Shown in pieces: positions 23,246-46,203 of a stretch of DNA of 64,000 bases. The stretch spans positions 76,570,001 to 76,634,000 of the forward strand of contig OX638153.1 in assembly GCA_951804945.1 (NCBI GenBank). Direction: 5' to 3'. The notes under the pieces were generated by a model, which saw only the letters and a program-made list of their open reading frames with translations, was not told where the DNA came from and did not search any database. Each line of letters starts with the position of its first letter. Position 1 is the stretch's first letter. Made by a program: the position numbers and the translations under genes. This stretch comes from Podarcis cretensis (Eukaryota).

Positions 23246-23923
23246 TTGTTGTACAGTTCGGTAACAAATAATATATTTATAGATACTGATGTTCCTTTTT
23301 GGGAGAAAAAAAGCACACGCACACAGCCCCCCACCCCCGCCAAGAAACCCAATTAAAATCCAGACACTGGGCTAATAAAACTGTCCAAGAAAAAACACCA
23401 TCACAAGATACCAGCACCGACGATCGCAGCTGTACAGCTAGAAATCCGTATTAAAACACTTTGGTTCATTGATACAAAAGGATGTTTCCATTCAAATCGA
23501 GGCCATTGTAAACGTATGGGAAGGAGTTGGTCCGCGGAGTCTGCCCTGGGAGGGTGTAAAATAAAAAGAAGAGCTCATGGAAAGAGGTGCGGGGAGGGGG
23601 AGGTGGCGGGAGGGGGGGTTGCTGTCCTCTGTGCCATAATAAATACAAAACGGGGGTGGGGGAGAGAGGGAGGAGGTTTGTCCACCCCCCCCCAGTGTAT
23701 CTTCTCTCCGATAGCCTGTGCAGCATTTCTGATCGAAGGTGACTGACTGGGGGAAGAGGGAAGAGGCTGGGGAGGGGGAGGCCTGGGATCGATTTCCGCC
23801 CCTCCCCCAAGAACCGGGCCTTGCCGACCCGCCGTTCGTCCAGTGTGAGCCAAGGATCCACAGCACCCCGAAAAGAACAATGCAGTCTCGCCGCCGCCGG
23901 CGGGCCATCCTACCGTATTGACT

Positions 23924-24375
23924 TTAATAAGTGGGCCGGGGCTCGCAGTTCGTGTAAGCGGCCTCTCCCGGGTGAGGTGACGGAGAGTTACTGGGTGGAG
24001 TCGGGATGCCGCTGGCCCCTGAGCTCTGACACACGTACCATTCGCTCAGGTTGGCTGCCGCCTGGGTGGAGGAAGCCGCTGCGGGAGGCGGTGGCGGCGG
24101 CGGCGGCGGCTGAGGGGGCTCCCGGCCGCAGTCCGACGACGGCGACACCAGCGACGGGGTGGACGACTCGTAGCCCGAGCTGGGAGGTGGGGACTTGCAG
24201 TGGACTTTCATGTGCTTCCGCAAGGAGCTGGGGTGCGTGTAGGACTTGTCACAGCCTCTCACTTTGCAGTTGTAGGGCTTGTCGCTCGTGTGCACGTGGG
24301 AATGCTTCTTCCTGTCGCTGCTGTTGGCGAAGCGGCGCTCGCAGCCCTCGAACTCGCATTTGAAGGGCTTCTCGC
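23924..24375 (-). CDS. ZIC4: ZIC4 coding exon with zinc fingers 4-5 and C-terminus (long form ends ...NLSEWYVC...EPRPTY*)
   Basis: Acceptor ctcttttccttgcag|GC GAG AAG. The ZIC4/5-type signature [37 protein letters not shown] continues without an intron into [26 protein letters not shown] at 23926-23924. Long-form CDS is 1647 nt, 548 aa. Confidence 0.95.
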
Positions 24376-29376: not shown

Positions 29377-30571
29377 CTGTGTGCGTCCTTTTGTGGATTT
29401 TGAGATTTTCCGAGCGAGCGAAGACTTTCCCGCATCCCGGGAAAGGACAAGGGAAAGGTTTCTCCCCCGTGTGGACTCGGATGTGGTTGACCAGTTTGTA
29501 TTTGGCCTTGAAAGGCTTCCCTTCCCTGGGACACTCTTCCCAGAAGCAAATGTGGTTGGACTGCTCCGGCCCTCCAACGTGCTCCACGGTGACGTGAGTC
29601 ACCAGCTCGTGCATGGTGCTGAAAGTTTTCGAGCATAATTTTTTGGGAGTCTGGTCCAGTTCGATCCACTTGCAGATGAGCTCCTGCTTGATGGGCTGCC
29701 TCATGTAGCGGAAGAAAGCCCCAGGGCCGTGGTGTGGAGCTAAATTCACGTTCAGGTTCATGCCACCGTAGCCGTGGAAGGAGGAAGCAGCAAAAGGATC
29801 TGTCCTGGAGACTGGTACTGGCGTGAAAGGTTCAGACCTGGCATACATTTCTCCAGGTAGCCCCAGCCTTATCTGTCCGTTTAGATGGCCACCTGGAGCT
29901 GCATGGGGATGTTGCTCATGGTGGAGTCCAGTAAAAAGCGAGGGAGTTCCGGCTTCTGAGTGGTGGTGGTGGTGGTGGAGGTGGTGGTGGTGGTGAGCAT
30001 GGTGTCCGGGGTAGCTACCTGTTGTTGAGACAAACATTCCATGGTGAGAACCTGTAGCAGCAGAGTGTTGATAAGGGAGCCCTGGCATGACTGGGGCTGT
30101 CAGATCTCTGCGCAGGAAGAATTCCCTACCTGATGAAAGAGCATGACTTGGGTGAGGGACTGCGTAAGGGACTGTTGTTGACTGCGCTGGGCCAAATGCT
30201 CCTGCTGGACTGGGTACCACCTCGGCTTGGCCTGTCACAGGATGGTGGGGATGAGGCTGAGGGGCAGGGCTGAGCTTAAGGGCCGCTGAGTGATGAGGAG
30301 GATGAGAGTGGTGGCGGTGGTGATGATGATGATGATGGAGAGGATGGTGGTGGTGCCCCATGTGTTCTGACCGGAATGGACTCAGCCCGAGGCGGCTTTC
30401 TGCAGCGTACTCCCCAGGGTGCGTGGGAACCATGGAGTGGGGATGCCCGGCGAAGCCTGTCATGCTCTGAGGGGAGTGGTGATGGTGGCGGTGATGACGA
30501 TGACGAGGAGCCCCTGCCAAGCCTAGTAACTTCAGCGCCGTGTTCCGTTTGGAGAGTGAAGCAGAGTCCAT
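29377..30571 (-). CDS. ZIC4: ZIC4 large coding exon (long His-rich N-terminus, ZF-NC, zinc fingers 1-3)
   Basis: [13 protein letters not shown]...[20 protein letters not shown]...[37 protein letters not shown]...HKRTHT. Phase-1 donor ACAG|GTCAGT at 29377/29376. Head-to-head with ZIC1, as in the known ZIC1-ZIC4 pair. Confidence 0.95.
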
Positions 30572-30939
30572 TACTGGGCTCCCCCAAAGCCTCCAAGCTC
30601 TCCTGGTTCTACTACAATTCTAAAAAGTCACCTGACGCCGAGGAGGGGGGAGCGAGGGAGAAAGAGGAAGAGGGAAAGAGCGGTGGAAAAACTTTTTTGA
30701 AAGTCCCCCGCCCCACCCGCAAAGAAAAAAAGGTTTTCCCCTCCCTCTCTCTTGGTCTGGACTATTTGGCTTTGTTTTGTTTTTGCTCCCTGCTCCCCCC
30801 CCTTCCCCTTTCTTTTCTCCCCCTCCTCTTCCATTATTTTGTGTGTGTGTGTTTTTCCTCCTTCCTTTTTTTTTTAATGCCTACGTGGAATCCCATACGC
30901 TTTGAGAAGCAGCAGCAGGACGCTGGGAGGCTACTGAAT

Positions 30940-31120
30940 AGCGCTTCACAGACTAGGCTCCAACCCAGAGAGCTAAACAATCAGGGCGGTCGCTGATTGG
31001 CCGAAGCTGCCTGACCGAAGTCAGCGCTGACAGGTCCCCGCTGAAGTCTGAAAAGATTTAGGAAGGGGTAAAGGGGCGGGGAGGGAGGAAGAGGACTCGG
31101 GAAGCAGTGCGCCTGCGCTG
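30940..31120 (-). promoter_or_regulatory. Proximal promoter of the long ZIC4 form
   Basis: GGCCAATCAG on the - strand (about 30993-31002) next to a GC box (GGGCGG 30984-30989), in CpG-rich DNA about 400 bp upstream of the ATG at 30571. Confidence 0.55.
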
Positions 31121-31639
31121 CGTTTGTGGCTAATCTCCCCCCCCTCCAAAAGCTCCTTCCCTTTCTCCCCCTCCTCTTCCCCCTTTGCCCCCCTCCCTCT
31201 CTAGCCCTAACCAGTGCGCCGAGCTTGTCCGGTGTTTGCATTTACTCCCCGCATTTTGTTTTTATCTGCGTTTAACTGATTAAGGGCCGCTGGAACCGTC
31301 TTCCCCAGACGAAACGAGGGGTCCTCCGAGTCGTTTACGCGCTAATGAGCAGTGGTTGCCAAAGGAGGAACAAGGCCTTGAGCAAGCGGCGGCAGCAGCT
31401 CCTGGGAGCGCCTGGGAGGCGAGGCTGGCCGGCGGGTGGCTGTTGCTTTCTCCCCACCCCTTCCAAAGACGCTTTGGTTGTCCCCGATCATCTGCTTAGA
31501 AGAGCCAGGCGCTTGGAGGTATCCTGGGTGATCTCCTGACTCCTGCATGGCTTGGATCGTGGCTCAAGCCCCTTCTGCTTTCTGTTCTCCTGCTAACCAT
31601 TTACTTTTACACACACACGTTCTTCTTCCACACCCAGCC

Positions 31640-31780
31640 CTGTCTCTCTTTCTCACTTAGCCTCATAATGAGCAGACGATTTAATGGAAAGCTCAGATCG
31701 GTGTCTGCTTCGGGGCGGACTGCCTGATTGGCCACCGAGCAGCTCATTGTGGACTAACCAAAGTGCAATTCTCAACACCC
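31640..31780 (-). promoter_or_regulatory. Second CCAAT + GC-box module upstream of ZIC4
   Basis: GGCCAATCAG on the - strand at 31733-31724 with GGGGCGG at 31712-31718, in the same order and orientation as the module at about 31.0 kb. Confidence 0.4.
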
Positions 31781-34700
31781 TTCCAGTTTCCTTCCTGCAA
31801 GAGCAACAACAAAGATGGAGAAGGGGCGGGAGGGAAGGAAGGTAGCACACATCACACAGGGACTTTCACAAAACTTCCGCTCTCGAGGGACAGGGGAGCG
31901 GCGGGGGGGGGGGGGGCAAACACGGCTAGGCCAAGCCACCGCAGAAATCAGCAGGGAAGGAGGTAGGGAGGAGAGAGACTGCCCGGAGAAGGTCTGCCGA
32001 GACGTAGCAAGCTCTCCTCCGTCCCCTTTCCCTGCCCTCACAATCGCCCAGATTATGAATGAATCCGAAAGACAGGACACGCGCGGGGCTTTCTGAGACC
32101 GCCTCATAAATTCCTTTGCCTACGACCCACCATTGTAGGAAGTAGAGAAGCGCGCAGGTTTGTTACCAAGCCTGTTTTGGGCCAGGAGCAAAAGTCTAGA
32201 TTTTTTTTTTTAAGCAATACAGCGATGGTGGTGGACCCCAAACCCCGGACCAGGCAAGATGCTTTCGAGGGATCCAATCCTACACACACACAACCTCCAC
32301 CCTCGCTTCCTAACCGCCAGCCCAACCGCGCCATCAATTTGACTGCTGATTATTTATAGCACAGACAAATCTCCGGGACTCCCGTCCCCAACAGAAATGG
32401 GCACAATGTGGAAGAGACAGGCTTTGCATACAGAAGTCGTCCTGGGAAGCGGAGCTGGGCAGCTAGGTATTTAGATTTCTGACACTTGTTGGCGGCCCAG
32501 AGAACCAGGCCTTTAAAACAACAACAACAAAGGCTAAAGCTCTGCCACATCTTTCATTTCCCACGATTACACGATATTTATGTAACCCTCCCTTTAAAAG
32601 TAATACAAAAAAGTAATACCTAATACCTGCAATTAACTGGCGCATATAACCCAATCCAAATGTTGCAAATCATTTCATCGTGTTGAATCCCTTTGCCTCT
32701 CCCTGTCAAACGCAATCGCCCACATTCATTTATAAGGAGCAATTAAAAGATCAAGTCAATTTAAAAAGCAACCTGTAGATTAGTAGATAAATCTATCGGA
32801 CGTTATGAGGCTCACATTTGCTCATTGTCAAAAGGAAAATAAACCGATTGCAAGTGTACTGTATCCGTGATGAAAATACAAGTATAGGGTTTATTATTTT
32901 TACCCCCACCAAAAAAAAAAAGTCATTGAGAGCCCTTCCAATGAATGCTGGAACCCGATATTACTGAATTCAGGTAATTCTGTTCTCCTCCATTTAGTGG
33001 GATAATATCAAAATTCGGCCTTGAACTCTGGACCTAAACTCCTAAACGTAAAAGTTACTTTAAGTACACCCACTTTCTGCAGAAGGGCAGCTTTCAATTT
33101 TACTTAAAATCCAGTAAGAAACACGGCAATTTTGAGAATGTTTCCCCCCATTGAACAAGCAGCATTTTTTTACTTTTAAATGACATCCGGCGAAAAGAGC
33201 CCTTTATTTTTATTTCATTTTTAAAAACTGAACCATTTGGGCAAAAGTAAAATGCAAAATCAACACGTACTTTTAAAAATAATACTGTATTCTTTTCCGC
33301 TTTGTGTCCCGTGTTAATAGCAGCACAAGTGATGTCCTGAAACCGAAAGCCGCTCTTAAGTTACTTGTGGTAATGCCCTGAGTATTAGTGAGGTCAGTGT
33401 TATTAAAGATGCAATCACAACACTCACTTGAGAGTAATCCCAACTGAATTCAGTGGAAGTTCCGAGGAAACATGCATAGGATGGGCTTTAACTCATTTCA
33501 GATGCAAGACTATGTGATGAATTAAAAGTGCCCCCCCCCCCAAGGAAGTCACATATTAAAGGAGAATAACATCATTTCTCGGGATACAGAACTTCAGTTT
33601 CAAGAGTAAATATTTCTTTCTCTCATCATCCCAAAATTTACATCCTGTCATACAGTAAATAAACTATCTGAAGCCGCACTGAACACTTACAGCTTTTCCA
33701 CCACTATCCCCTTCCCCCCAAAAATATTTGAACTTTTTGTTTTTATTTTTTAAAAGCAACGTTTAGCTATACTGTGAAAACAGTTGCCAGTCACTGCATT
33801 TTAGAAAAATCACCCCGGAGACAGACCTTAGCAAACATCAAAACAATTTCTTGGGATATTCTAAAGTTGCTAGCTAAATGTTGTTTTTGTATGCTTGGGA
33901 ACAACAATTCCCGACTCAAGCAATTGCCAGTCAAATTTACGTAAAGCAGAAAATAGGAGCCTGCCTCCTATAAAATATTTTTGAATTGCTAAATCGTGGA
34001 ATATTGCGTTCAAGATGTACGACATGCATAAATAATTATCTAAGAAGCATCTCATTACATTTTATACCATAGCGGGAGTTATATTCTTGTTTTTGACCAT
34101 TTTTGTACAGATCACAATACTGAGGATAAAATAAAAGGCAGCTAAATCGGTATTTATTATTGTATGAATGTAACGCGCGCGCACACATTGATGCCCCGAG
34201 GACCTGAAAAGTTACACACGCTGTAATTAACTAGCTCTCCTTACGTAACATGTTTATGTAGACAACTTAACCCCCCCAGCAGTTCAAGACGACCTTCCCT
34301 TGCCAGTTTCTTTGCCCTAAGCCAAAAACATTTCGTATTTTCCCTTCCTCCTCCCTGACCATCTCCGAAGGAGATCACAGAAAGAAAGAAACGTTATCGG
34401 AAGCAGGACTCTGGAAGGCTGTTACTTACAAAGGTACTGAGAGTGTGACTTCCAAATAAAGCTGTTTTCCTCATCCCTCCTTACAACCACTTCACCTCTA
34501 CACTCTTGACATCCTTCAGTCCTGACAGTCCTCAGTCAAGGGAGAAAACATCTGGAACAGTTTATCAATATATATATGTTACTATCGGTTGGCTTAGGCC
34601 ATTCTAAAATATTGGCATGGCTTCTTGTCAAACGCTAATGGCTTTATCCGCTCTTACTTAAAACCCTGAGGTTCCTCACAGGGGTTTCCCCCCCTTGTTC

Positions 34701-34821
34701 CCCCCTCTGCTTGCATGAGTCCAATGGAAAAGAAATGGCCCATGGTGTCTCTCTCATTATATTAGGTGAAGTTAGTGCTCTCACTCCTAGCATTTGTTGT
34801 GTACCTTGGGAGACATATCTC

Positions 34822-34826
34822 TGTGC

Positions 34827-34857
<31 letters not shown>

Positions 34858-34864
34858 CGCGCAT
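34822..34864. repeat. (GT)n(GC)n alternating purine-pyrimidine tract
   Basis: tgtgcgtgtgtg...gcgcgcgcgcgcgcat, read directly. Confidence 0.9.
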
Positions 34865-37249
34865 AAAGGAGACAGAGCAGACAAGTGAGGGAGGGTGGTG
34901 ATGCAGATGGAGCTGTACACATGACCAGAAGGCGGGGGAAACAGAACTAGGAGGGCCTGAACAAAGTTGCAGAGTTATCCAGGAGACTTGCGTCTGCGAT
35001 GCAGCTCTTACCTGTCTAATGTGCACTTTTCTTTGTGGTTCCCTCAGTGTGTGCGCGCGCGCGCACGGTTCATTTAGTAGTTCATTTTGCCAGCAAAACA
35101 TGTTCTATATATTGAGTAGATAAAGCGACCAGAAGAGCAGAAGAGCTCACCCTTCCACAAATAAACAAATCGGGATGGCAGGGACTCCCCGCCTTATATT
35201 TTAAAACTGTCATGGCCCTCATGGACACATTCCAATTCTAATATAAATACTGGAGCTGAGGAACTTGATGACAAGGAGAGCTGCGCTTTGCAAGAATAAC
35301 GCCCAGCCCAGTTGTTAGCACGGCCACTAGCCAAAAGCAGAATCTAAACTCTCCAAAGGCAATAAGACTGTTTGGTTACTAGCTCCATTGGACTGCTGCT
35401 GCTGCTGCTGCTAATACTACTACTACTACTGCTGCTGCTGCTATTAGCTTCCCACCGGAGGACCGCAGCCGCATAAGGCGTGGAAGAGACAATTAGAAGT
35501 CCTTGCACGTTTGTCCACACAAAATGTTTTGCGGATCGCAGTTTCTCCCCCTACTGACTGCCCTGGACAATGCGGCCCAATTGTAAAGTATTGGCAAGAT
35601 GCCCTTTACTCACAGAGCCCAGTTAAGTCACCTATTGAAACGACTGGGACTATGTAAGCGGGTTTCAATGAGATTGCTGCGGCTTAAGTGTCTTGTGAAC
35701 TGGTTTGAGGATCCTAACAACTTGAACACCGTGGCCCAGTGGTTGTTTTTTTTTTTGGGGGGGGGGGAATCACAGACTTGCCCTGCCAGACAGTGGGTCG
35801 GAGAGAGATGAGTTTTGTTGAAGAAAAACCCTCTTATTACGCACACACAACCACATTGACAGCACCTACTAATAACCATTGAAAAGCTGAACAAATGACA
35901 ATTGACTTCTTCCGTTTCAGGTTTTGCTTATCATAGCCTAGGAAATAAATGCATACCAGAAAGTAGGCAGCAAAGCAGCCATTCTGCCCTCTGTCTCCCA
36001 CTGACACCAGCGACAATTATGTCTGCTTAAGTGTCGGCAGGATTGCCGCCCAATGGCGTGTTCTGTTGCTTCCAGTGACCTCAGCCACCAACTGGAAAAG
36101 ATGTGGTTAAGATTTCTGCATAAGAGAAACCACAGTATTATTTCTGTAGGCTGGAGATTCAGCAGAAATCTGTTGTGGGAAGGAGATTTACACTTTCCCC
36201 CCAAAATACCTTCTCGATCAGTTCCAAGGATCAAAAGCCTAAGAGTCTGAGGTGCTTTTTTCACTCTAAACCCAGATATAATCACATTTGTAGTTTATAT
36301 TATCTTTTATACGCTGGGAGTATTTTCTTTACCCCATCTCTTTAACATAGTTTATTAGGCTGTATCTGTTAGCAGAATCTGACCTTTAGCTTTTAGTTAA
36401 AACAGCCAGATTCTCTGGGCGACTGAGACCCCCAGAAACTTTTTTCGCGTTTTCTATGTCTGTCTCGCTGAAGGGTCATTGAATCAGTGTAGGGAAGTGG
36501 TGACCTTTCCGAAGAAGGTCTTCACTGCTTATGAAGAAGGAAAGTCTTGCGAATAAGGGATTTCTATGCAACTCTACCCCTTCCCACTTCAAAAATCGCC
36601 TGTAAACGCAAATCTTCAGGGTGCACTACGGACATTGTCGCCTTATTTCGAATAGCAGCGTAGGAATTCATAGGAAAAGGAACCGGCCCGATAAGAGGCT
36701 TCCTTAAGCTGAAATATACGGGTGCAAGACTTGTGTCGTGCACATGATTTCGAGGGAAACAATCCATTTAAAACCCAAGTTATCTGGGGGATTAACTGAG
36801 TTGTTGATGGGATGTAAGAGCATAATACAGGGGGAAGCCCGTGTTTCCTGATCACCTATTCAGCATTTAGGCAGCCGGGAGACTTAAGAAAAGGGAAGGA
36901 ATTCACCAAAATCAAGAAGAGCCACGTGGAAGGATTGGCGAAGAATCGCCGCAAGATAATGATGAGAATTAAACGTGAACCCTCCCTTTTATTCAGGAAT
37001 GTATTGGCTCAGAAAATATGACGGAAAATAAAGGAGAAATTCTGTATCTTTCCCCCCTTTTTATTATGCCCTGCTTTTTATTGCTGAAAACTAATGTCTA
37101 TTTGGGCTAAGCTGCAGGAAAGGATGACAAAGCAGGTAATAGGTAGAAGGTAACGACCAGTTGTGAAGATGGGATGGCTTCAAATCCTCTTCCTTCCACC
37201 AGTTCAGAACTTGAATTACTGAAGATCAACCCAATCAAATGTTTATTTC

Positions 37250-37570
37250 AAATGGAATACTTAATCTAGTGCCTCAGATTAAGGTATTCCTGTCAGATAA
37301 GATGTCAATCAATGCCCTACTTAACTCCTCGCATGGTGGAAGTTGGGTAGCCACCACATTGTGGAAAGCTGGTATACCGGGTAACGATGATACATATCAT
37401 GTAAACCCCATCGCCAAGATCAAAGCTTTCTTCTTTAATAGGATCCAATACATGTCAAACCTCATTCCAATCAAATTGCCCGTAAATTAATGCAAGATGA
37501 ATATGTCATAGAATAATGTGACAATGCAATCACAGAGGGTCAGGGGTTGTTGTTTCAATGAGAGAGTTGT
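37250..37570. promoter_or_regulatory. Candidate conserved intergenic/intronic enhancer
   Basis: Non-repetitive AT-rich block with a TCF/LEF consensus AGATCAAAG (about 37407), several TAAT, TGTCA and ACAAT motifs, next to the alternative ZIC4 exon. Confidence 0.35.
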
Positions 37571-37747
37571 CAAATATTAATTCTAGAACCTCCAAATGAA
37601 TAGGCAGAGAGCAGGATTAAGCACTTGCTGGTGGGACCTTGTGTGGCTGATTTGTGTTCATGCAAGCAAGTTAAACACTAGAGGGGAGGAATCATATATT
37701 GTCTTTGGGCTTTTTTTTTTAAAAAAGAAAGTCATATTTTAACTTAC

Positions 37748-37832
37748 TTGACTGTCCCAGAAGGTTTCTGTAAAGTCGTTTTCTTTTCCTCATTACAAGG
37801 CGACCCTTGTGCCTTATTTTCTAACTTGGTTC
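37748..37832 (-). CDS. ZIC4: ZIC4 alternative upstream 85-nt exon carrying a mammal-type start (ATG at 37793; MRKRKRLYRNLLGQS)
   Basis: Acceptor ccacttttctctcctgaacag|GAACC and donor TCA A|GTAAGT. Translation IRHKGRLVMRKRKRLYRNLLGQS aligns without gaps to the human ZIC4 N-terminus as I recall it ([23 protein letters not shown]). Its phase-1 end matches the internal acceptor at 30018. Confidence 0.8.
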
Positions 37833-40154
37833 CTGTTCAGGAGAGAAAAGTGGCAATATTTTTTAAAGTGTCTAGTTTATATGCAAGTGATAAATAATTG
37901 AAGAATGGCGTGAAATCTTTTTCTTTTCTTTTTAATACCCCCATCCCGAATAAAAACCTCAAATTGTTTTGGAACTCAAGTCTTTGTGTCGCCAAAATAT
38001 GGCAGAAGTAAAGAAGGAGGGGAGGGGGAGAGATGGAAGAGGTGGAATATATTTACAATAAAACATTTCAAAACTTCGTGCATATATTACAGAACAACCC
38101 TAGGGCTGATTTAGAGGAAGAGATAGGACAGGAGATTTCCAGAATTCTGCTTTGATCTGACACATACCTCCTGGCTGAGCACTGAGAAGTGTTACCACCG
38201 ACGACGCTGCATTGTTTATGGACTTTTCAGAGCGAATATTAAACTTTTCAGCGCTAATATCGTCGTGTTTGTTTGCAAGACTCTTCCAACCAAAGATGGG
38301 ATGCTTTAAAGCTGCCGCTTTTGCACCGTCCAACTCTTACTTTCAAAGGAGAACCAATGGCCTGGCTGTGCCAAGAGAGGTGCTCTCAGTGCAGATACTA
38401 AGACTTAAGATGAGACTTCAAAAAGCAATAGATTCAGCCCTTGACTTAGTGCTAGTGGTCAATGTGAACAGTAAAGTAGGAATAATAGGAAGGAGTGACG
38501 ATAACCCTTGTGCCAGTTGCAGAGGAAGTAAATGACCAAGTCTAAATATTGTTGCAGGAGCTCTTTCTGGATACAGTATATATTCCTGAAAGGGAGATAG
38601 GAAGGAGAGGAATATATACTTTATATAATTCCATAAGAACCAAATAATGCAAATATGTGAGCTCAAAGAGGGATTTCTTATAGCTTGTAGTTGTTGTTTT
38701 TATTTTTAAAAAACTATATTAGAAAGATTTCCAATGGGAGTGAAATAAATAAATAAATAAATACTCTTAAAATGCTCAATGAAGTTATTGAATCAAGGAG
38801 GGGCTTTATATGGGATATCCAAACTTGACACTTTTGAATCATTGTAAATTATTATGATGCTATTAATTATTTTTTATTCTGGAATACGTTTTAATTTTTA
38901 AAAATAAACAGATGTGGGGGGGGAGGCAGAGGCCAGATTTCCTCAAATACTATCAAGGTGGAGTGCAACGTCTCTGCACATCATATAAAATTTGGGGTTA
39001 TTATTAACACCGAAGTAGTGTTCTGACCTGAAGAGGGGGAAAGATAGGATTTCCTGTTACTTTTTGGCTCGAAAAAAGGAGAGGAAATAGGTGCAAGGTC
39101 CATGAATGGGGAAAAAACCCTGGCATTATATACCTTAACCTCACTTATTAATACTTATTTTTTCCTAGTTCAAAGTTTGACACGCACTTCTCCCGAAATT
39201 TCAAAAGGGTTTAAGTTAGGGGGCACTGTAAACAGCGTCTGTTTACAGCCCGAACTCTGTCTTATGTATTCCATTCCAGAAGTGCATGAGATTATTTTAT
39301 TGTGTGAGATGCACTTCTGAGATGAGATGGAACAAGCATGTGTATGTGTGCGTAGGGGTTGGTGCGCGTGTGTGTGTAGTATTTACATCCAGAAAGGCTG
39401 GACTTCTGCTGCAGGTCGGCTAGTCAACAGCCTCTATTTCCATACTAAAAACAATTTGGCAGCACTCAAATCATGGCCGGTAACCCGACTCTCCATGCAG
39501 CCAGCCATTCTAATAAACTTCCAGCAAATCTTTTACATATCCAGCTGACTCTTTGGAATATCATGCGGAATTTGGGGGTTCTTCTTATGAACTATTTCCA
39601 TCCTCAAACGGCCTAGTTAAGGCAAGGGAAGCTGCAATGAATCCACCTCCCCAACGTATATTGTTTTAAAAGCATAACATATATTTTTCAACGCTCTGAG
39701 ACTGAGCATACAAGGCTCAAGGTAATCCTAAATGTCTATTACTCTTATAGAGCAACTAAGAAGACACTTGGACAGATCTTGCCTTTCAAGAGCTAGACAA
39801 ACTGTTTGCGGAGAGCATTAGAGCAACTCTATTCTTGGACGGAGGTTAGGAAATCAGGTTGAGCTAGTCGTTCGAAACGGAAGGGCGAACCAATGTGCAC
39901 AGAGGCGGGCGCGCGCGGGCGCGCGGGCCCGCGGCTACACACTCGAGTCATTGTCCCGGATACGGTGGGCCCGGCACATGTTCCCGGTCGCAGGTCAGAG
40001 GTCAAGCTCCAGGGGTGTTTCCAAAGCCGGCCACTTCAAGAACTCAAGCCTTCAACACTTATCCAAACTGATTAACTACATGATCAACAGTAGCCAAGGA
40101 AATGCAACGGGCTTCACAGGTCTCGCCACTGCGAGAAATAGCCAGACCAGGATA

Positions 40155-41315: not shown

Positions 41316-41580
41316 CCCACTCCACCTGTTGAAGCAGAGATCCCCTCATTTCTGCCTAGCATGTCAGAACTGACCAAAAAAAGAGAAGAAAGTCGAAAGA
41401 CAGAGGGAGACGAGAGGAGAGGCTGGGGGGTGGGTGGGATAGAGGGGGTAGGGTGGGCAGCGGTTGGATCAAACAAAATCAAAACACCTCTTGGGCGACT
41501 TCATCGAGGCGGTCATCCTTCATTTCTTCTTTTCTTGCTTTCTGGGAGCAGCTGGGGATTGTATGGAGAGGCAGAAATGA
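41316..41580 (-). other. ZIC4: Candidate non-coding first exon of the distal ZIC4 transcript
   Basis: Consensus donor GG|GTAAGTG at 41316/41315 and TATA-like TATAAG at 41610-41605 on the - strand. It lies about 3.5-3.8 kb upstream of the ZIC1 ATG, where a distal ZIC4 promoter would be expected. No transcript evidence is available. Confidence 0.4.
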
Positions 41581-42130
41581 ACCTTCAGGATGATATTTTA
41601 ATGGCTTATATGTCACGTTGGTGCATGTGGCTTTGAACTGGAGCAGCTTTCGTTTCCTGCAGAGAGCATGCCGCAAATCCCACTTGATAACTTCTGCAGC
41701 CCACAACACTTGCACACAGAGCGCGCGCAGACACACACACACACACACACACAAAAAAAATGGACTTTATATCTGAACATGTTCCCAACAGCAAACAAAC
41801 AAACAAACTTTGGACTGTACCCTTCCACGGTTGTTGACTCTTGAGTGCTGCTCTGCATTTTGGAGAGGCGAATCTATTCCCTTTTGCTAACTTCAAGTAT
41901 GTGTAGATTATTCTCTCTGGAACCAAACGTTCCTGAGATTCTTGCCCGTCGCTCTGGGATTAGGCATACTAGAGCGAAAGGGCGAAAGAGCAAGATCTCA
42001 TTACATATACCAAGTCGAACACATGAAAACTCTTTATATTCCTTATCAAGGGAAGATGCTTCAGACCTGTTGCTTTAGGACCTTAGATGTGTGCTTGTAT
42101 GTATGTGTGTATGTGTTTGTATGCGTCTGT

Positions 42131-45021: not shown

Positions 45022-46203
<1,182 letters not shown>

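What the first reader, a model, noticed from the sequence alone, without database searches (positions are those of the whole stretch)
30018..37832. Two ZIC4 N-terminal architectures coexist: long ancestral exon plus a mammal-type upstream exon splicing into an acceptor inside the coding exon
Seen: an 85-nt exon (37832-37748) with canonical splice sites encodes (I)RHKGRLV-MRKRKRLYRNLLGQS and ends in phase 1. Inside the long ORF, tttgtctcaacaacag|GT AGC TAC (codons FVSTT-G) forms a phase-1 acceptor at 30019/30018, giving ...GQS-SSYPGHH in frame. Recalled knowledge: human ZIC4 starts [31 protein letters not shown], which aligns residue for residue across this junction. The codon matching the human first ATG is ATA here (37817-37815) and an in-frame TAG lies upstream, so the second Met would be the start. 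Inference: the reptile keeps both the fish/frog-like long form (184 extra residues) and the short form that mammals fixed, which shows how mammalian ZIC4 lost its N-terminus. The basic MRKRKR leader resembles an NLS.
Basis: partly seen in the sequence, partly recalled or inferred. Interest (0 to 1): 0.85.

Follow-up and report, generated by a model that had tools for sequence, protein, structure and literature searches.

The report
Lizard ZIC4 alternative N-terminal isoforms

Summary
The 85-nt exon (37832-37748, minus strand) has a canonical acceptor and a GTAAGT donor. It ends in phase 1 and fits the AG|GT acceptor at 30019/30018 inside the long ZIC4 exon.

The window comes from a Podarcis-like lacertid: its long exon matches Podarcis raffonei ZIC4 at 396 of 399 residues. 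RefSeq already lists the predicted short protein as Podarcis muralis ZIC4 isoform X5, beside long isoforms X1/X2/X4. Its N-terminus matches both window pieces exactly.

The interpretation needs three corrections.
- There is a third form. An in-frame 111-nt internal intron (30129-30019) uses the same acceptor and removes the ZOC-like box (Podarcis X3).
- Coexistence is not reptilian. Birds, turtles, marsupials and Xenopus models show the same set, and only eutherians lack the long N-terminus.
- The internal acceptor is older than the leader exon. Shark, teleost and frog models splice other upstream exons into it, and it lies in the most conserved N-terminal decamer.

The scan's only earlier notes on this lie on this same window, none on other DNA.

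Verdict: real, already annotated, modest interest.

The parts
41488..41709 (-). Conserved 5' exon of the distal (leader-type) ZIC4 transcripts. It is non-coding for ZIC4 in this lizard. The donor is GAG|GTGTTT at 41488/41487. The transcription start is unknown.
   Evidence: Local tblastn gives 82% identity over 74 codons to the N-terminus of pigeon ZIC4 isoform X4 (P0064), E 1e-39, and 9/12 to the start of Pogona X3. The sequence was read.
37748..37832 (-). 85-nt leader exon (AG|...|GTAAGT) that ends in phase 1. It carries TAG 37823-37821, ATA 37817-37815 and the short-form start codon ATG 37793-37791.
   Evidence: sequence and translation. One search gives a single clear match (next best E 0.1 or worse) for amniote leader peptides. 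One search shows the piece MRKRKRLYRNLLGQS is identical to the first 15 residues of Podarcis muralis X5 and Zootoca X2.
30019..30571 (-). Long-form-specific coding segment of 184 codons plus 1 nt, starting at ATG 30571. It holds His-rich tracts and the ZOC-like box REFFLRRD.
   Evidence: ORF. It is 99% identical to the Podarcis long isoforms. Mean identity to 13 jawed-vertebrate long forms is 0.61 for residues 1-147 and 0.74 for residues 148-184.
30019..30129 (-). In-frame 111-nt internal intron ('exitron') with donor TCAG|GTAGGG (exon end 30130). It uses the same acceptor as the leader exon. It removes 37 codons, including the ZOC-like box.
   Evidence: length 111, GT...AG. Podarcis X3 models P0134/P0129 read ...HALSSG|SYPGHH and align to the window with the matching gap. 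The same deletion is seen from coelacanth, gar and teleosts to marsupials. One teleost spliced mRNA contig also shows it (P0097).
30018..30034 (-). Shared internal 3' splice site: tttgtctcaacaacag|G. These bases are also the codons for FVSTT-G. The first common exon base is 30018.
   Evidence: [10 protein letters not shown] is the most conserved N-terminal decamer (0.98 identity across 13 species). Eutherian genomic ORFs still read LFVSTTG just before the junction.
29377..30018 (-). Part of the big exon common to all isoforms. It runs from SYPGHH... through ZF-NC to zinc fingers 1-3. The donor is ACAG|GTCAGT.
   Evidence: Pfam zf_ZIC, zf-C2H2_15 and zf-C2H2 hits. tblastn of Podarcis isoforms.
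23927..24375 (-). Last large coding exon (zinc fingers 4-5 and C-terminus). Its acceptor is ttccttgcag|GC. It has an internal alternative donor ATG|GTACGT at 24039/24038.
23404..23544 (-). Alternative 3' coding exon that gives the ...AIVGAGIL tail of Podarcis X1/X3/X5/X6.
   Evidence: tblastn gives 47/47 identical residues.

Best explanation
This is the ZIC4 gene of a Podarcis-like lacertid lizard, lying head to head with ZIC1.

Its first coding exon contains an old, weak internal 3' splice site whose bases also encode the conserved FVSTTG motif. Three N-terminal forms share everything from SYPGHH onward (ZF-NC and the five zinc fingers):
1. A proximal-start transcript reads the whole exon and gives the long protein with a ZOC-like box.
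2. The same transcript can remove a 111-nt in-frame internal intron that ends at that site. This deletes the ZOC-like box.
3. Distal-start transcripts join a conserved non-coding exon (about 41.5-41.7 kb) to the 85-nt leader exon and then to the same site. Translation then starts at ATG 37793 and gives a short protein that begins MRKRKRLYRN... and lacks the whole ancestral N-terminus.

This set is ancestral for tetrapods, and the acceptor is ancestral for jawed vertebrates. Eutherians kept only form 3.

Shown: the sequence features, frame compatibility, and identity of each piece to annotated Podarcis isoforms.
Inferred: use of the junctions in this animal, promoter positions, and functional differences between the isoforms.
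For: - Sequence and frames.
- Species: the window's long exon matches P. raffonei X1/X2 at 396/399 residues.
- All four blocks of Podarcis muralis X5 (P0124) map to the window: 37793-37746, the 30018-29377 exon (tblastn block 30034-29372), 24379-24038 and 23544-23404.
- X3 (P0129) maps with a 39-column gap, which is the 37 intron codons plus two more (a length difference elsewhere).
- The same three junction classes appear across taxa.
- A spliced teleost mRNA contig lacks the 37 codons: P0097, 403 aa on a 1278-nt contig.
- The Xenopus X3 leader sits in the same register, p about 1e-4.
- No eutherian protein has the long N-terminus when the opossum N-terminus is the query.
- The long N-terminus is strongly conserved, peaking at the acceptor.
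Against: - No RNA reads from this species were examined.
- RefSeq XP models are predictions, and their RNA support could not be inspected.
- The internal acceptor has a poor pyrimidine tract (50%).
- A 15-codon upstream ORF (ATG 41523 to TAG 37821) precedes the short-form start and could limit its translation.
Codon-level selection on the leader exon was therefore not measured.
Confidence: 0.85

Rival explanations
1. The leader-exon transcripts exist but are mainly regulatory or non-productive. They would be 5' variants burdened by an upstream ORF, so the long protein is the only significant ZIC4 product in lizards.
For: In this lizard the bird/Pogona upstream start (MKDD...) runs into TAG 37823-37821. 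That makes a 15-codon upstream ORF ending 27 nt before ATG 37793. The first Met of the turtle, bird and mammal leader is ATA here.
Against: - The peptide from the second Met is conserved without indels across squamates, and the 24-residue leader across amniotes.
- The ATG has a purine at -3.
- In eutherians this same form is the only ZIC4 protein with a conserved N-terminus.
Confidence: 0.08
2. The 85-nt exon is a conserved non-coding element, and the sauropsid short isoforms are annotation artefacts projected from mammalian ZIC4.
For: The ZIC1-ZIC4 interval holds deeply conserved non-coding sequence. For example, the 41.5-41.7 kb exon is 82% identical at the translated level to pigeon although it cannot code here. 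RNA support for the XP models was not seen here.
Against: - The exon has canonical, strong splice sites and the correct phase.
- Many independent RefSeq annotations include species-specific 5' variants and several mRNAs per protein.
- The Xenopus and marsupial leaders are too diverged from the eutherian one to be simple projections.
Confidence: 0.04
3. One reading: reptiles are a transitional stage that carries exactly two forms, an old fish/frog long form and a newly arisen mammal-type short form.
For: Both forms are encoded in the window.
Against: - A third form (internal intron) uses the same acceptor.
- Marsupials, birds, turtles and Xenopus show the same repertoire.
- Sharks and cyprinids splice other upstream exons into the same acceptor, so the design is ancestral and not transitional.
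Confidence: 0.03

Closest known systems
RefSeq zinc finger protein ZIC 4 isoforms of Podarcis muralis / P. raffonei (X1-X6, e.g. X5 = XP_028587070.1)
   Same: X5 has the same leader (MRKRKRLYRNLLGQS-S-SYPGHH) and the same exon blocks in the window. X3 matches the 111-nt internal-intron form. X1/X2/X4 match the long form.
   Different: There are a few residue and His-repeat length differences (395-396 identical residues over 399-400 aligned columns), so the window is probably a sister species or another individual. The RefSeq entries are predictions.
Eutherian ZIC4 (canonical short protein, MR(Y/S)KTSLVMRKR(L/I)RLYRN...SS|SSSGHHG)
   Same: It has the homologous leader exon, the same junction position and phase, and the same downstream protein.
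   Different: Eutherians start at the first Met, whereas the lizard has ATA there and starts 8 codons later. Eutherians have no long N-terminus: only LFVSTTG survives upstream of the acceptor.
Xenopus / fish zic4 long protein with ZOC-like box (Layden et al. 2010, PMC2988786)
   Same: The long N-terminus is collinear with the window's 184 extra residues, and the ZOC-like RDFL-x-RR box lies at the same place.
   Different: The lizard box reads REFF-L-RR. The paper does not describe the internal acceptor or the isoforms.
Exitrons (internal, protein-coding introns inside an exon; general concept from established knowledge)
   Same: The 30129-30019 segment has GT...AG ends, lies wholly within a coding exon, is a multiple of three in length, and is coding when retained.
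   Different: Here the exitron's acceptor is also the acceptor for upstream alternative first exons. No paper linking ZIC4 and exitrons was found.

Membership tests
ZIC family, ZIC4 orthologue | ZIC-type first zinc finger and C2H2 fingers | tested here: met
   Pfam zf_ZIC PF18366 E 1e-27, zf-C2H2_15 E 7e-22 and zf-C2H2.
ZIC family, ZIC4 orthologue | ZF-NC motif GAF(F/L)[10 protein letters not shown] just before ZF1 | tested here: met
   [14 protein letters not shown] is read in the ORF. Identity across species is 0.98-0.99. The consensus comes from PMC2988786.
ZIC family, ZIC4 orthologue | Best matches are ZIC4, and the gene lies head to head with ZIC1 | tested here: met
   The top hits are all ZIC4. 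ZIC1 exon 1 lies at 45088-46161 on the plus strand. The pairing is described in PMC7403390.
ZOC box (RDFL-(1-2 aa)-RR consensus of Layden 2010) | Sequence match to the consensus in the N-terminus | tested here: inconclusive
   The window has REFF-L-RR (D>E, L>F). Most other long ZIC4s have an exact RDFL-I-RR. Binding or activation function was not testable.
Alternative first-exon isoform using an internal 3' splice site | Canonical splice sites and compatible phase | tested here: met
   AG|exon|GTAAGT, phase 1 into AG|GT at 30018, giving an open frame.
Alternative first-exon isoform using an internal 3' splice site | Orthologous annotated isoform with the same junction | tested here: met
   Podarcis muralis X5 and Zootoca X2 are identical across the junction. 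The form is also found in other squamates, turtles, birds, marsupials and eutherians.
Alternative first-exon isoform using an internal 3' splice site | Junction-spanning RNA reads in this species | not testable with these tools
Exitron | GT-AG intron wholly inside a coding exon, length divisible by three, with spliced transcripts observed | tested here: met
   The intron is 111 nt with GT...AG ends. Podarcis X3 models match it. A spliced teleost mRNA contig, P0097, lacks the same 37 codons. It was not observed as RNA in this species.
Classical monopartite NLS | K-(K/R)-X-(K/R) basic cluster that drives nuclear import | tested here: inconclusive
   RKRKR fits the pattern. The Xenopus leader has RTTLG at the same place. 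Import activity was not testable.

The most novel reading that the evidence does not exclude
In all jawed vertebrates the ZOC-bearing N-terminus of ZIC4 is an optional module. It is switched off either by an in-frame internal intron or by upstream first exons. Both routes use one internal 3' splice site, more than 400 million years old, that doubles as the invariant FVSTTG codons. Eutherians made the ZOC-less state permanent by letting the long ORF decay while keeping the splice site. 'ZIC4 lacks a ZOC box' would then be a eutherian peculiarity, and zic4 work in frog, fish and chick would be isoform-dependent.
Probability: 0.55. Interest if true: 0.5.

Novelty: already known. Interest (0 to 1): 0.3.

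Why it matters
For this window it matters little.

Reviews and functional papers class ZIC4 as a 'subclass B' protein without a ZOC box (PMC7403390). Outside eutherians, though, the gene encodes a well conserved ZOC-like N-terminus that splicing can include or drop through one ancient acceptor.

That gives a concrete, testable reason why mammalian and non-mammalian ZIC4 might behave differently in reporter and embryo assays. It also gives a clean example of a coding motif preserved as a splice signal after the surrounding ORF was lost. I found no paper stating this in the searchable library, but subscription papers were not covered.

Tried and rejected
As a precaution, no letters of 29850-37900 went to any outside search tool afterwards. 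Later work on that stretch was local only (scripts and alignments against database proteins).
I could not inspect DNA upstream of the acceptor in eutherians or monotremes, or the leader exon in amphibians and fish. No dN/dS was computed.
- Leader-region word search with the tortoise isoform: it returned only 15 candidates (turtles and birds) and missed known squamate and mammalian leaders. Its blank for amphibians and fish therefore means nothing. Cluster listings did the job instead.
- Shark leader versus amniote leader: not significant (p 0.03-0.2). Homology is not claimed.
- CpG and GC profile for promoter calls: no clear islands at 30.6-31 kb or 41.7 kb. No promoter claim is made.
- Spliced model: I never joined the exons into one sequence for any search. 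Each piece was compared by reference with the database isoforms.
- Eutherian 'read-through' proteins from ENA and Logan: I first took them for transcripts, then re-read them as genomic ORFs because they run on into the intron after THTG. I use them only as a view of the genomic sequence upstream of the acceptor.
Full report
**1. What is in the sequence**

On the minus strand, 37832-37748 is an 85-nt segment.
- It is preceded by ttttctctcctgaacag and followed by GTAAGT.
- In the frame of the finding it reads EPS*KIRHKGRLVMRKRKRLYRNLLGQS plus one spare base.
- TAG lies at 37823-37821, ATA at 37817-37815 and ATG at 37793-37791.

The long ORF starts at ATG 30571. Inside it the bases tttgtctcaacaacag|GTAGCTAC form an AG|G acceptor, and 30018 is the first downstream base.
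- The spare A plus GT makes a Ser codon, so the frame continues into SYPGHH.
- Upstream of that point the long ORF has 184 codons plus one base.
- Every coordinate in the finding is correct.
- The only correction is outside it: the big exon ends at 29377 (ACAG|GTCAGT).

**2. What gene and what animal**

- The 399-residue exon product carries zf_ZIC, zf-C2H2_15 and zf-C2H2 and the ZF-NC motif.
- ZIC1 exon 1 lies on the opposite strand at 45088-46161. This is the known ZIC1/ZIC4 pair (PMC7403390).
- The nearest proteins are squamate ZIC4.
- Within the cluster of the best hit, Podarcis raffonei X1/X2 match the window exon at 396 of 399 residues, and P. muralis at 395 of 400 columns.
- The window is therefore a Podarcis-like lacertid.

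**3. The short form is already annotated**

- Podarcis muralis isoform X5 (P0124, XP_028587070.1 and three further accessions) and Zootoca vivipara X2 (P0139) begin MRKRKRLYRNLLGQSSSYPGHH. That is the window's leader piece, the junction Ser and the downstream exon.
- I compared the pieces separately and did not join them for any search.
- Local tblastn places P0124 in four blocks: 37793-37746, the 30018-29377 exon (tblastn block 30034-29372), 24379-24038 and 23544-23404.
- Other squamates have the same start at the second Met: Hemicordylus, Heteronotia, Anolis and Phrynocephalus.
- Pogona X3 reads through from an upstream MKDG... start.
- Turtles, birds, marsupials and eutherians carry the full 24-residue leader MR(H/Y)KT.LVMRKR.RLYRN....SS before the same junction.
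- Within the window these leaders match clearly only at 37746-37838; all other hits score E 0.1 or worse.

**4. A third architecture on the same acceptor**

Sorting 260 ZIC4 proteins by what precedes SYPGH gives a further common class that reads ...QALSAG|SYPGH and lacks 37 residues.
- In the window the donor for this is TCAG|GTAGGG (exon end 30130). The removed piece, 30129-30019, is 111 nt with GT...AG ends and is in frame.
- Podarcis X3 (P0134, P0129) reads ...HALSSG|SYPGHH and aligns to the window with the matching gap.
- The same deletion is modelled in python and rattlesnake, turtles, falcon, opossum, dunnart, monito del monte, many frogs, coelacanth, gar and many teleosts.
- It is also present in a Logan contig of 1278 nt encoding 403 residues through all five fingers. 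That contig can only be a spliced mRNA (P0097).
- The removed codons hold the ZOC-like box. This is REFFLRRD here and RDFLIRRD in most species, which fits the RDFL-(1-2)-RR consensus of Layden et al. 2010 (PMC2988786).

**5. The acceptor is older than the leader**

- Xenopus tropicalis and X. laevis X3 (P0209, P0214) have a 24-residue leader in the same register. It has 8 of 23 identities to the tortoise and opossum leaders. Against 50,000 shuffles, p is about 1e-4.
- The leader exon is therefore probably at least tetrapod-old, although its basic cluster is not conserved in Xenopus.
- Sharks, a sawfish, a ray, cyprinids and some frogs have unrelated upstream exons joined to the same ...G|SYPGH junction. 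The shark leader is not significantly like the amniote one.
- In an alignment of the window with 13 long forms from shark to opossum, [10 protein letters not shown] is 0.98 identical. It is the most conserved N-terminal decamer before the GQIRLGLPG motif and ZF-NC (0.96-0.99). Residues 1-147 average 0.61 and the 37 intron codons 0.74.
- The site's pyrimidine tract is weak: 50%, against 75-80% at the neighbouring constitutive acceptors. This is as expected for a site constrained by coding.

**6. Who lost the long form**

- Marsupials keep all three classes: Monodelphis X1/X3 long, X2/X4 intron-spliced and X5/X7 leader. Dromiciops, Sminthopsis, Antechinus, Vombatus and Sarcophilus add further examples.
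- With the lizard N-terminus as query, no eutherian hit covers more than 40% of residues 1-290.
- With the opossum N-terminus (residues 1-208) as query, the 89 hits include no eutherian and no monotreme protein.
- Eutherian models and genomic ORFs that read through the acceptor show unrelated sequence followed by LFVSTTG|SSSGHHG.
- Hence the loss is eutherian, not mammalian. What survives upstream of the junction is exactly the splice-site region.
- That splicing is what preserves it is an inference.

**7. The distal 5' exon and upstream ORF**

- 41709-41488 translates with 82% identity over 74 codons to the N-terminus of pigeon isoform X4 (E 1e-39).
- In the lizard the pigeon start position is GTG.
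- The inner ATG (41523) gives MKDDRLDEVAQE, which would continue across 41488->37832 into EPS and the TAG. That makes a 15-codon upstream ORF ending 27 nt before ATG 37793.
- The 41488->37832 junction is inferred from the Pogona and bird models, not observed.

**8. Mechanism, with odds**

- At 0.85 I take the locus to make long, intron-spliced and leader-type ZIC4. These differ only in whether the ancestral N-terminus and its ZOC-like box are present.
- From PMC2988786 and PMC7403390, the ZOC box of ZIC2/ZIC3 modulates trans-activation and partner binding.
- The likely consequence is isoform-specific transcriptional activity on a shared DNA-binding domain. This step is inferred.
- The NLS reading of RKRKR rests on a pattern only.

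**9. What could not be done**

- The RNA support behind the RefSeq models was not visible to me.
- Literature searches found no paper describing these ZIC4 isoforms or the eutherian loss. Subscription journals are not covered.

**10. Verdict**

- The feature itself is already in public annotation.
- Interest is 0.3.

Noticed in passing
window 41488-41709 (-): This 5' exon translates with 82% identity over 74 codons to the annotated N-terminus of pigeon ZIC4 isoform X4. It cannot code for ZIC4 here: the pigeon start position is GTG and there is a stop in the next exon. Either it is a deeply conserved non-coding exon or element between ZIC1 and ZIC4, or the bird ORF is an annotation artefact. 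A (TG)n microsatellite abuts it at about 41715-41750.
   Followed up: partly
window 41521-41523 to 37821-37823 (-): If 41488 splices to 37832 as in the Pogona and bird models, there is a 15-codon upstream ORF (MKDDRLDEVAQE + EPS*). It ends 27 nt before the short-form ATG. In birds and Pogona the same ATG is in frame with the main ORF.
   Followed up: partly
window 24037-24040 and 23404-23544 (-): The donor ATG|GTACGT hidden in the E-W-Y-V codons is used by the RefSeq Podarcis models. X4 ends ...ANLSE. X1/X3/X5/X6 continue into the 23544-23404 exon (47/47 residues identical).
   Followed up: partly
window 29848 (-) downstream: Podarcis X6 (P0123, 319 aa), Anolis X3, Pantherophis X2 and ray and skate models start at an internal Met (MYARSEPF...) downstream of the junction. 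This is a fourth, still shorter annotated N-terminus.
   Followed up: no
proteins P0010 vs P0023/P0025 vs P0001-P0004: The opossum long N-terminus is closer to teleost ZIC4 (63-64% identity) than to squamate ZIC4 (55-60%). The squamate N-terminus seems to have evolved faster.
   Followed up: no
window 45088-46161 (+), ZIC1: At the position homologous to FVSTTG|SYPGH, ZIC1 reads [11 protein letters not shown] with GC-rich codons and no pyrimidine tract. The internal acceptor looks specific to ZIC4.
   Followed up: partly
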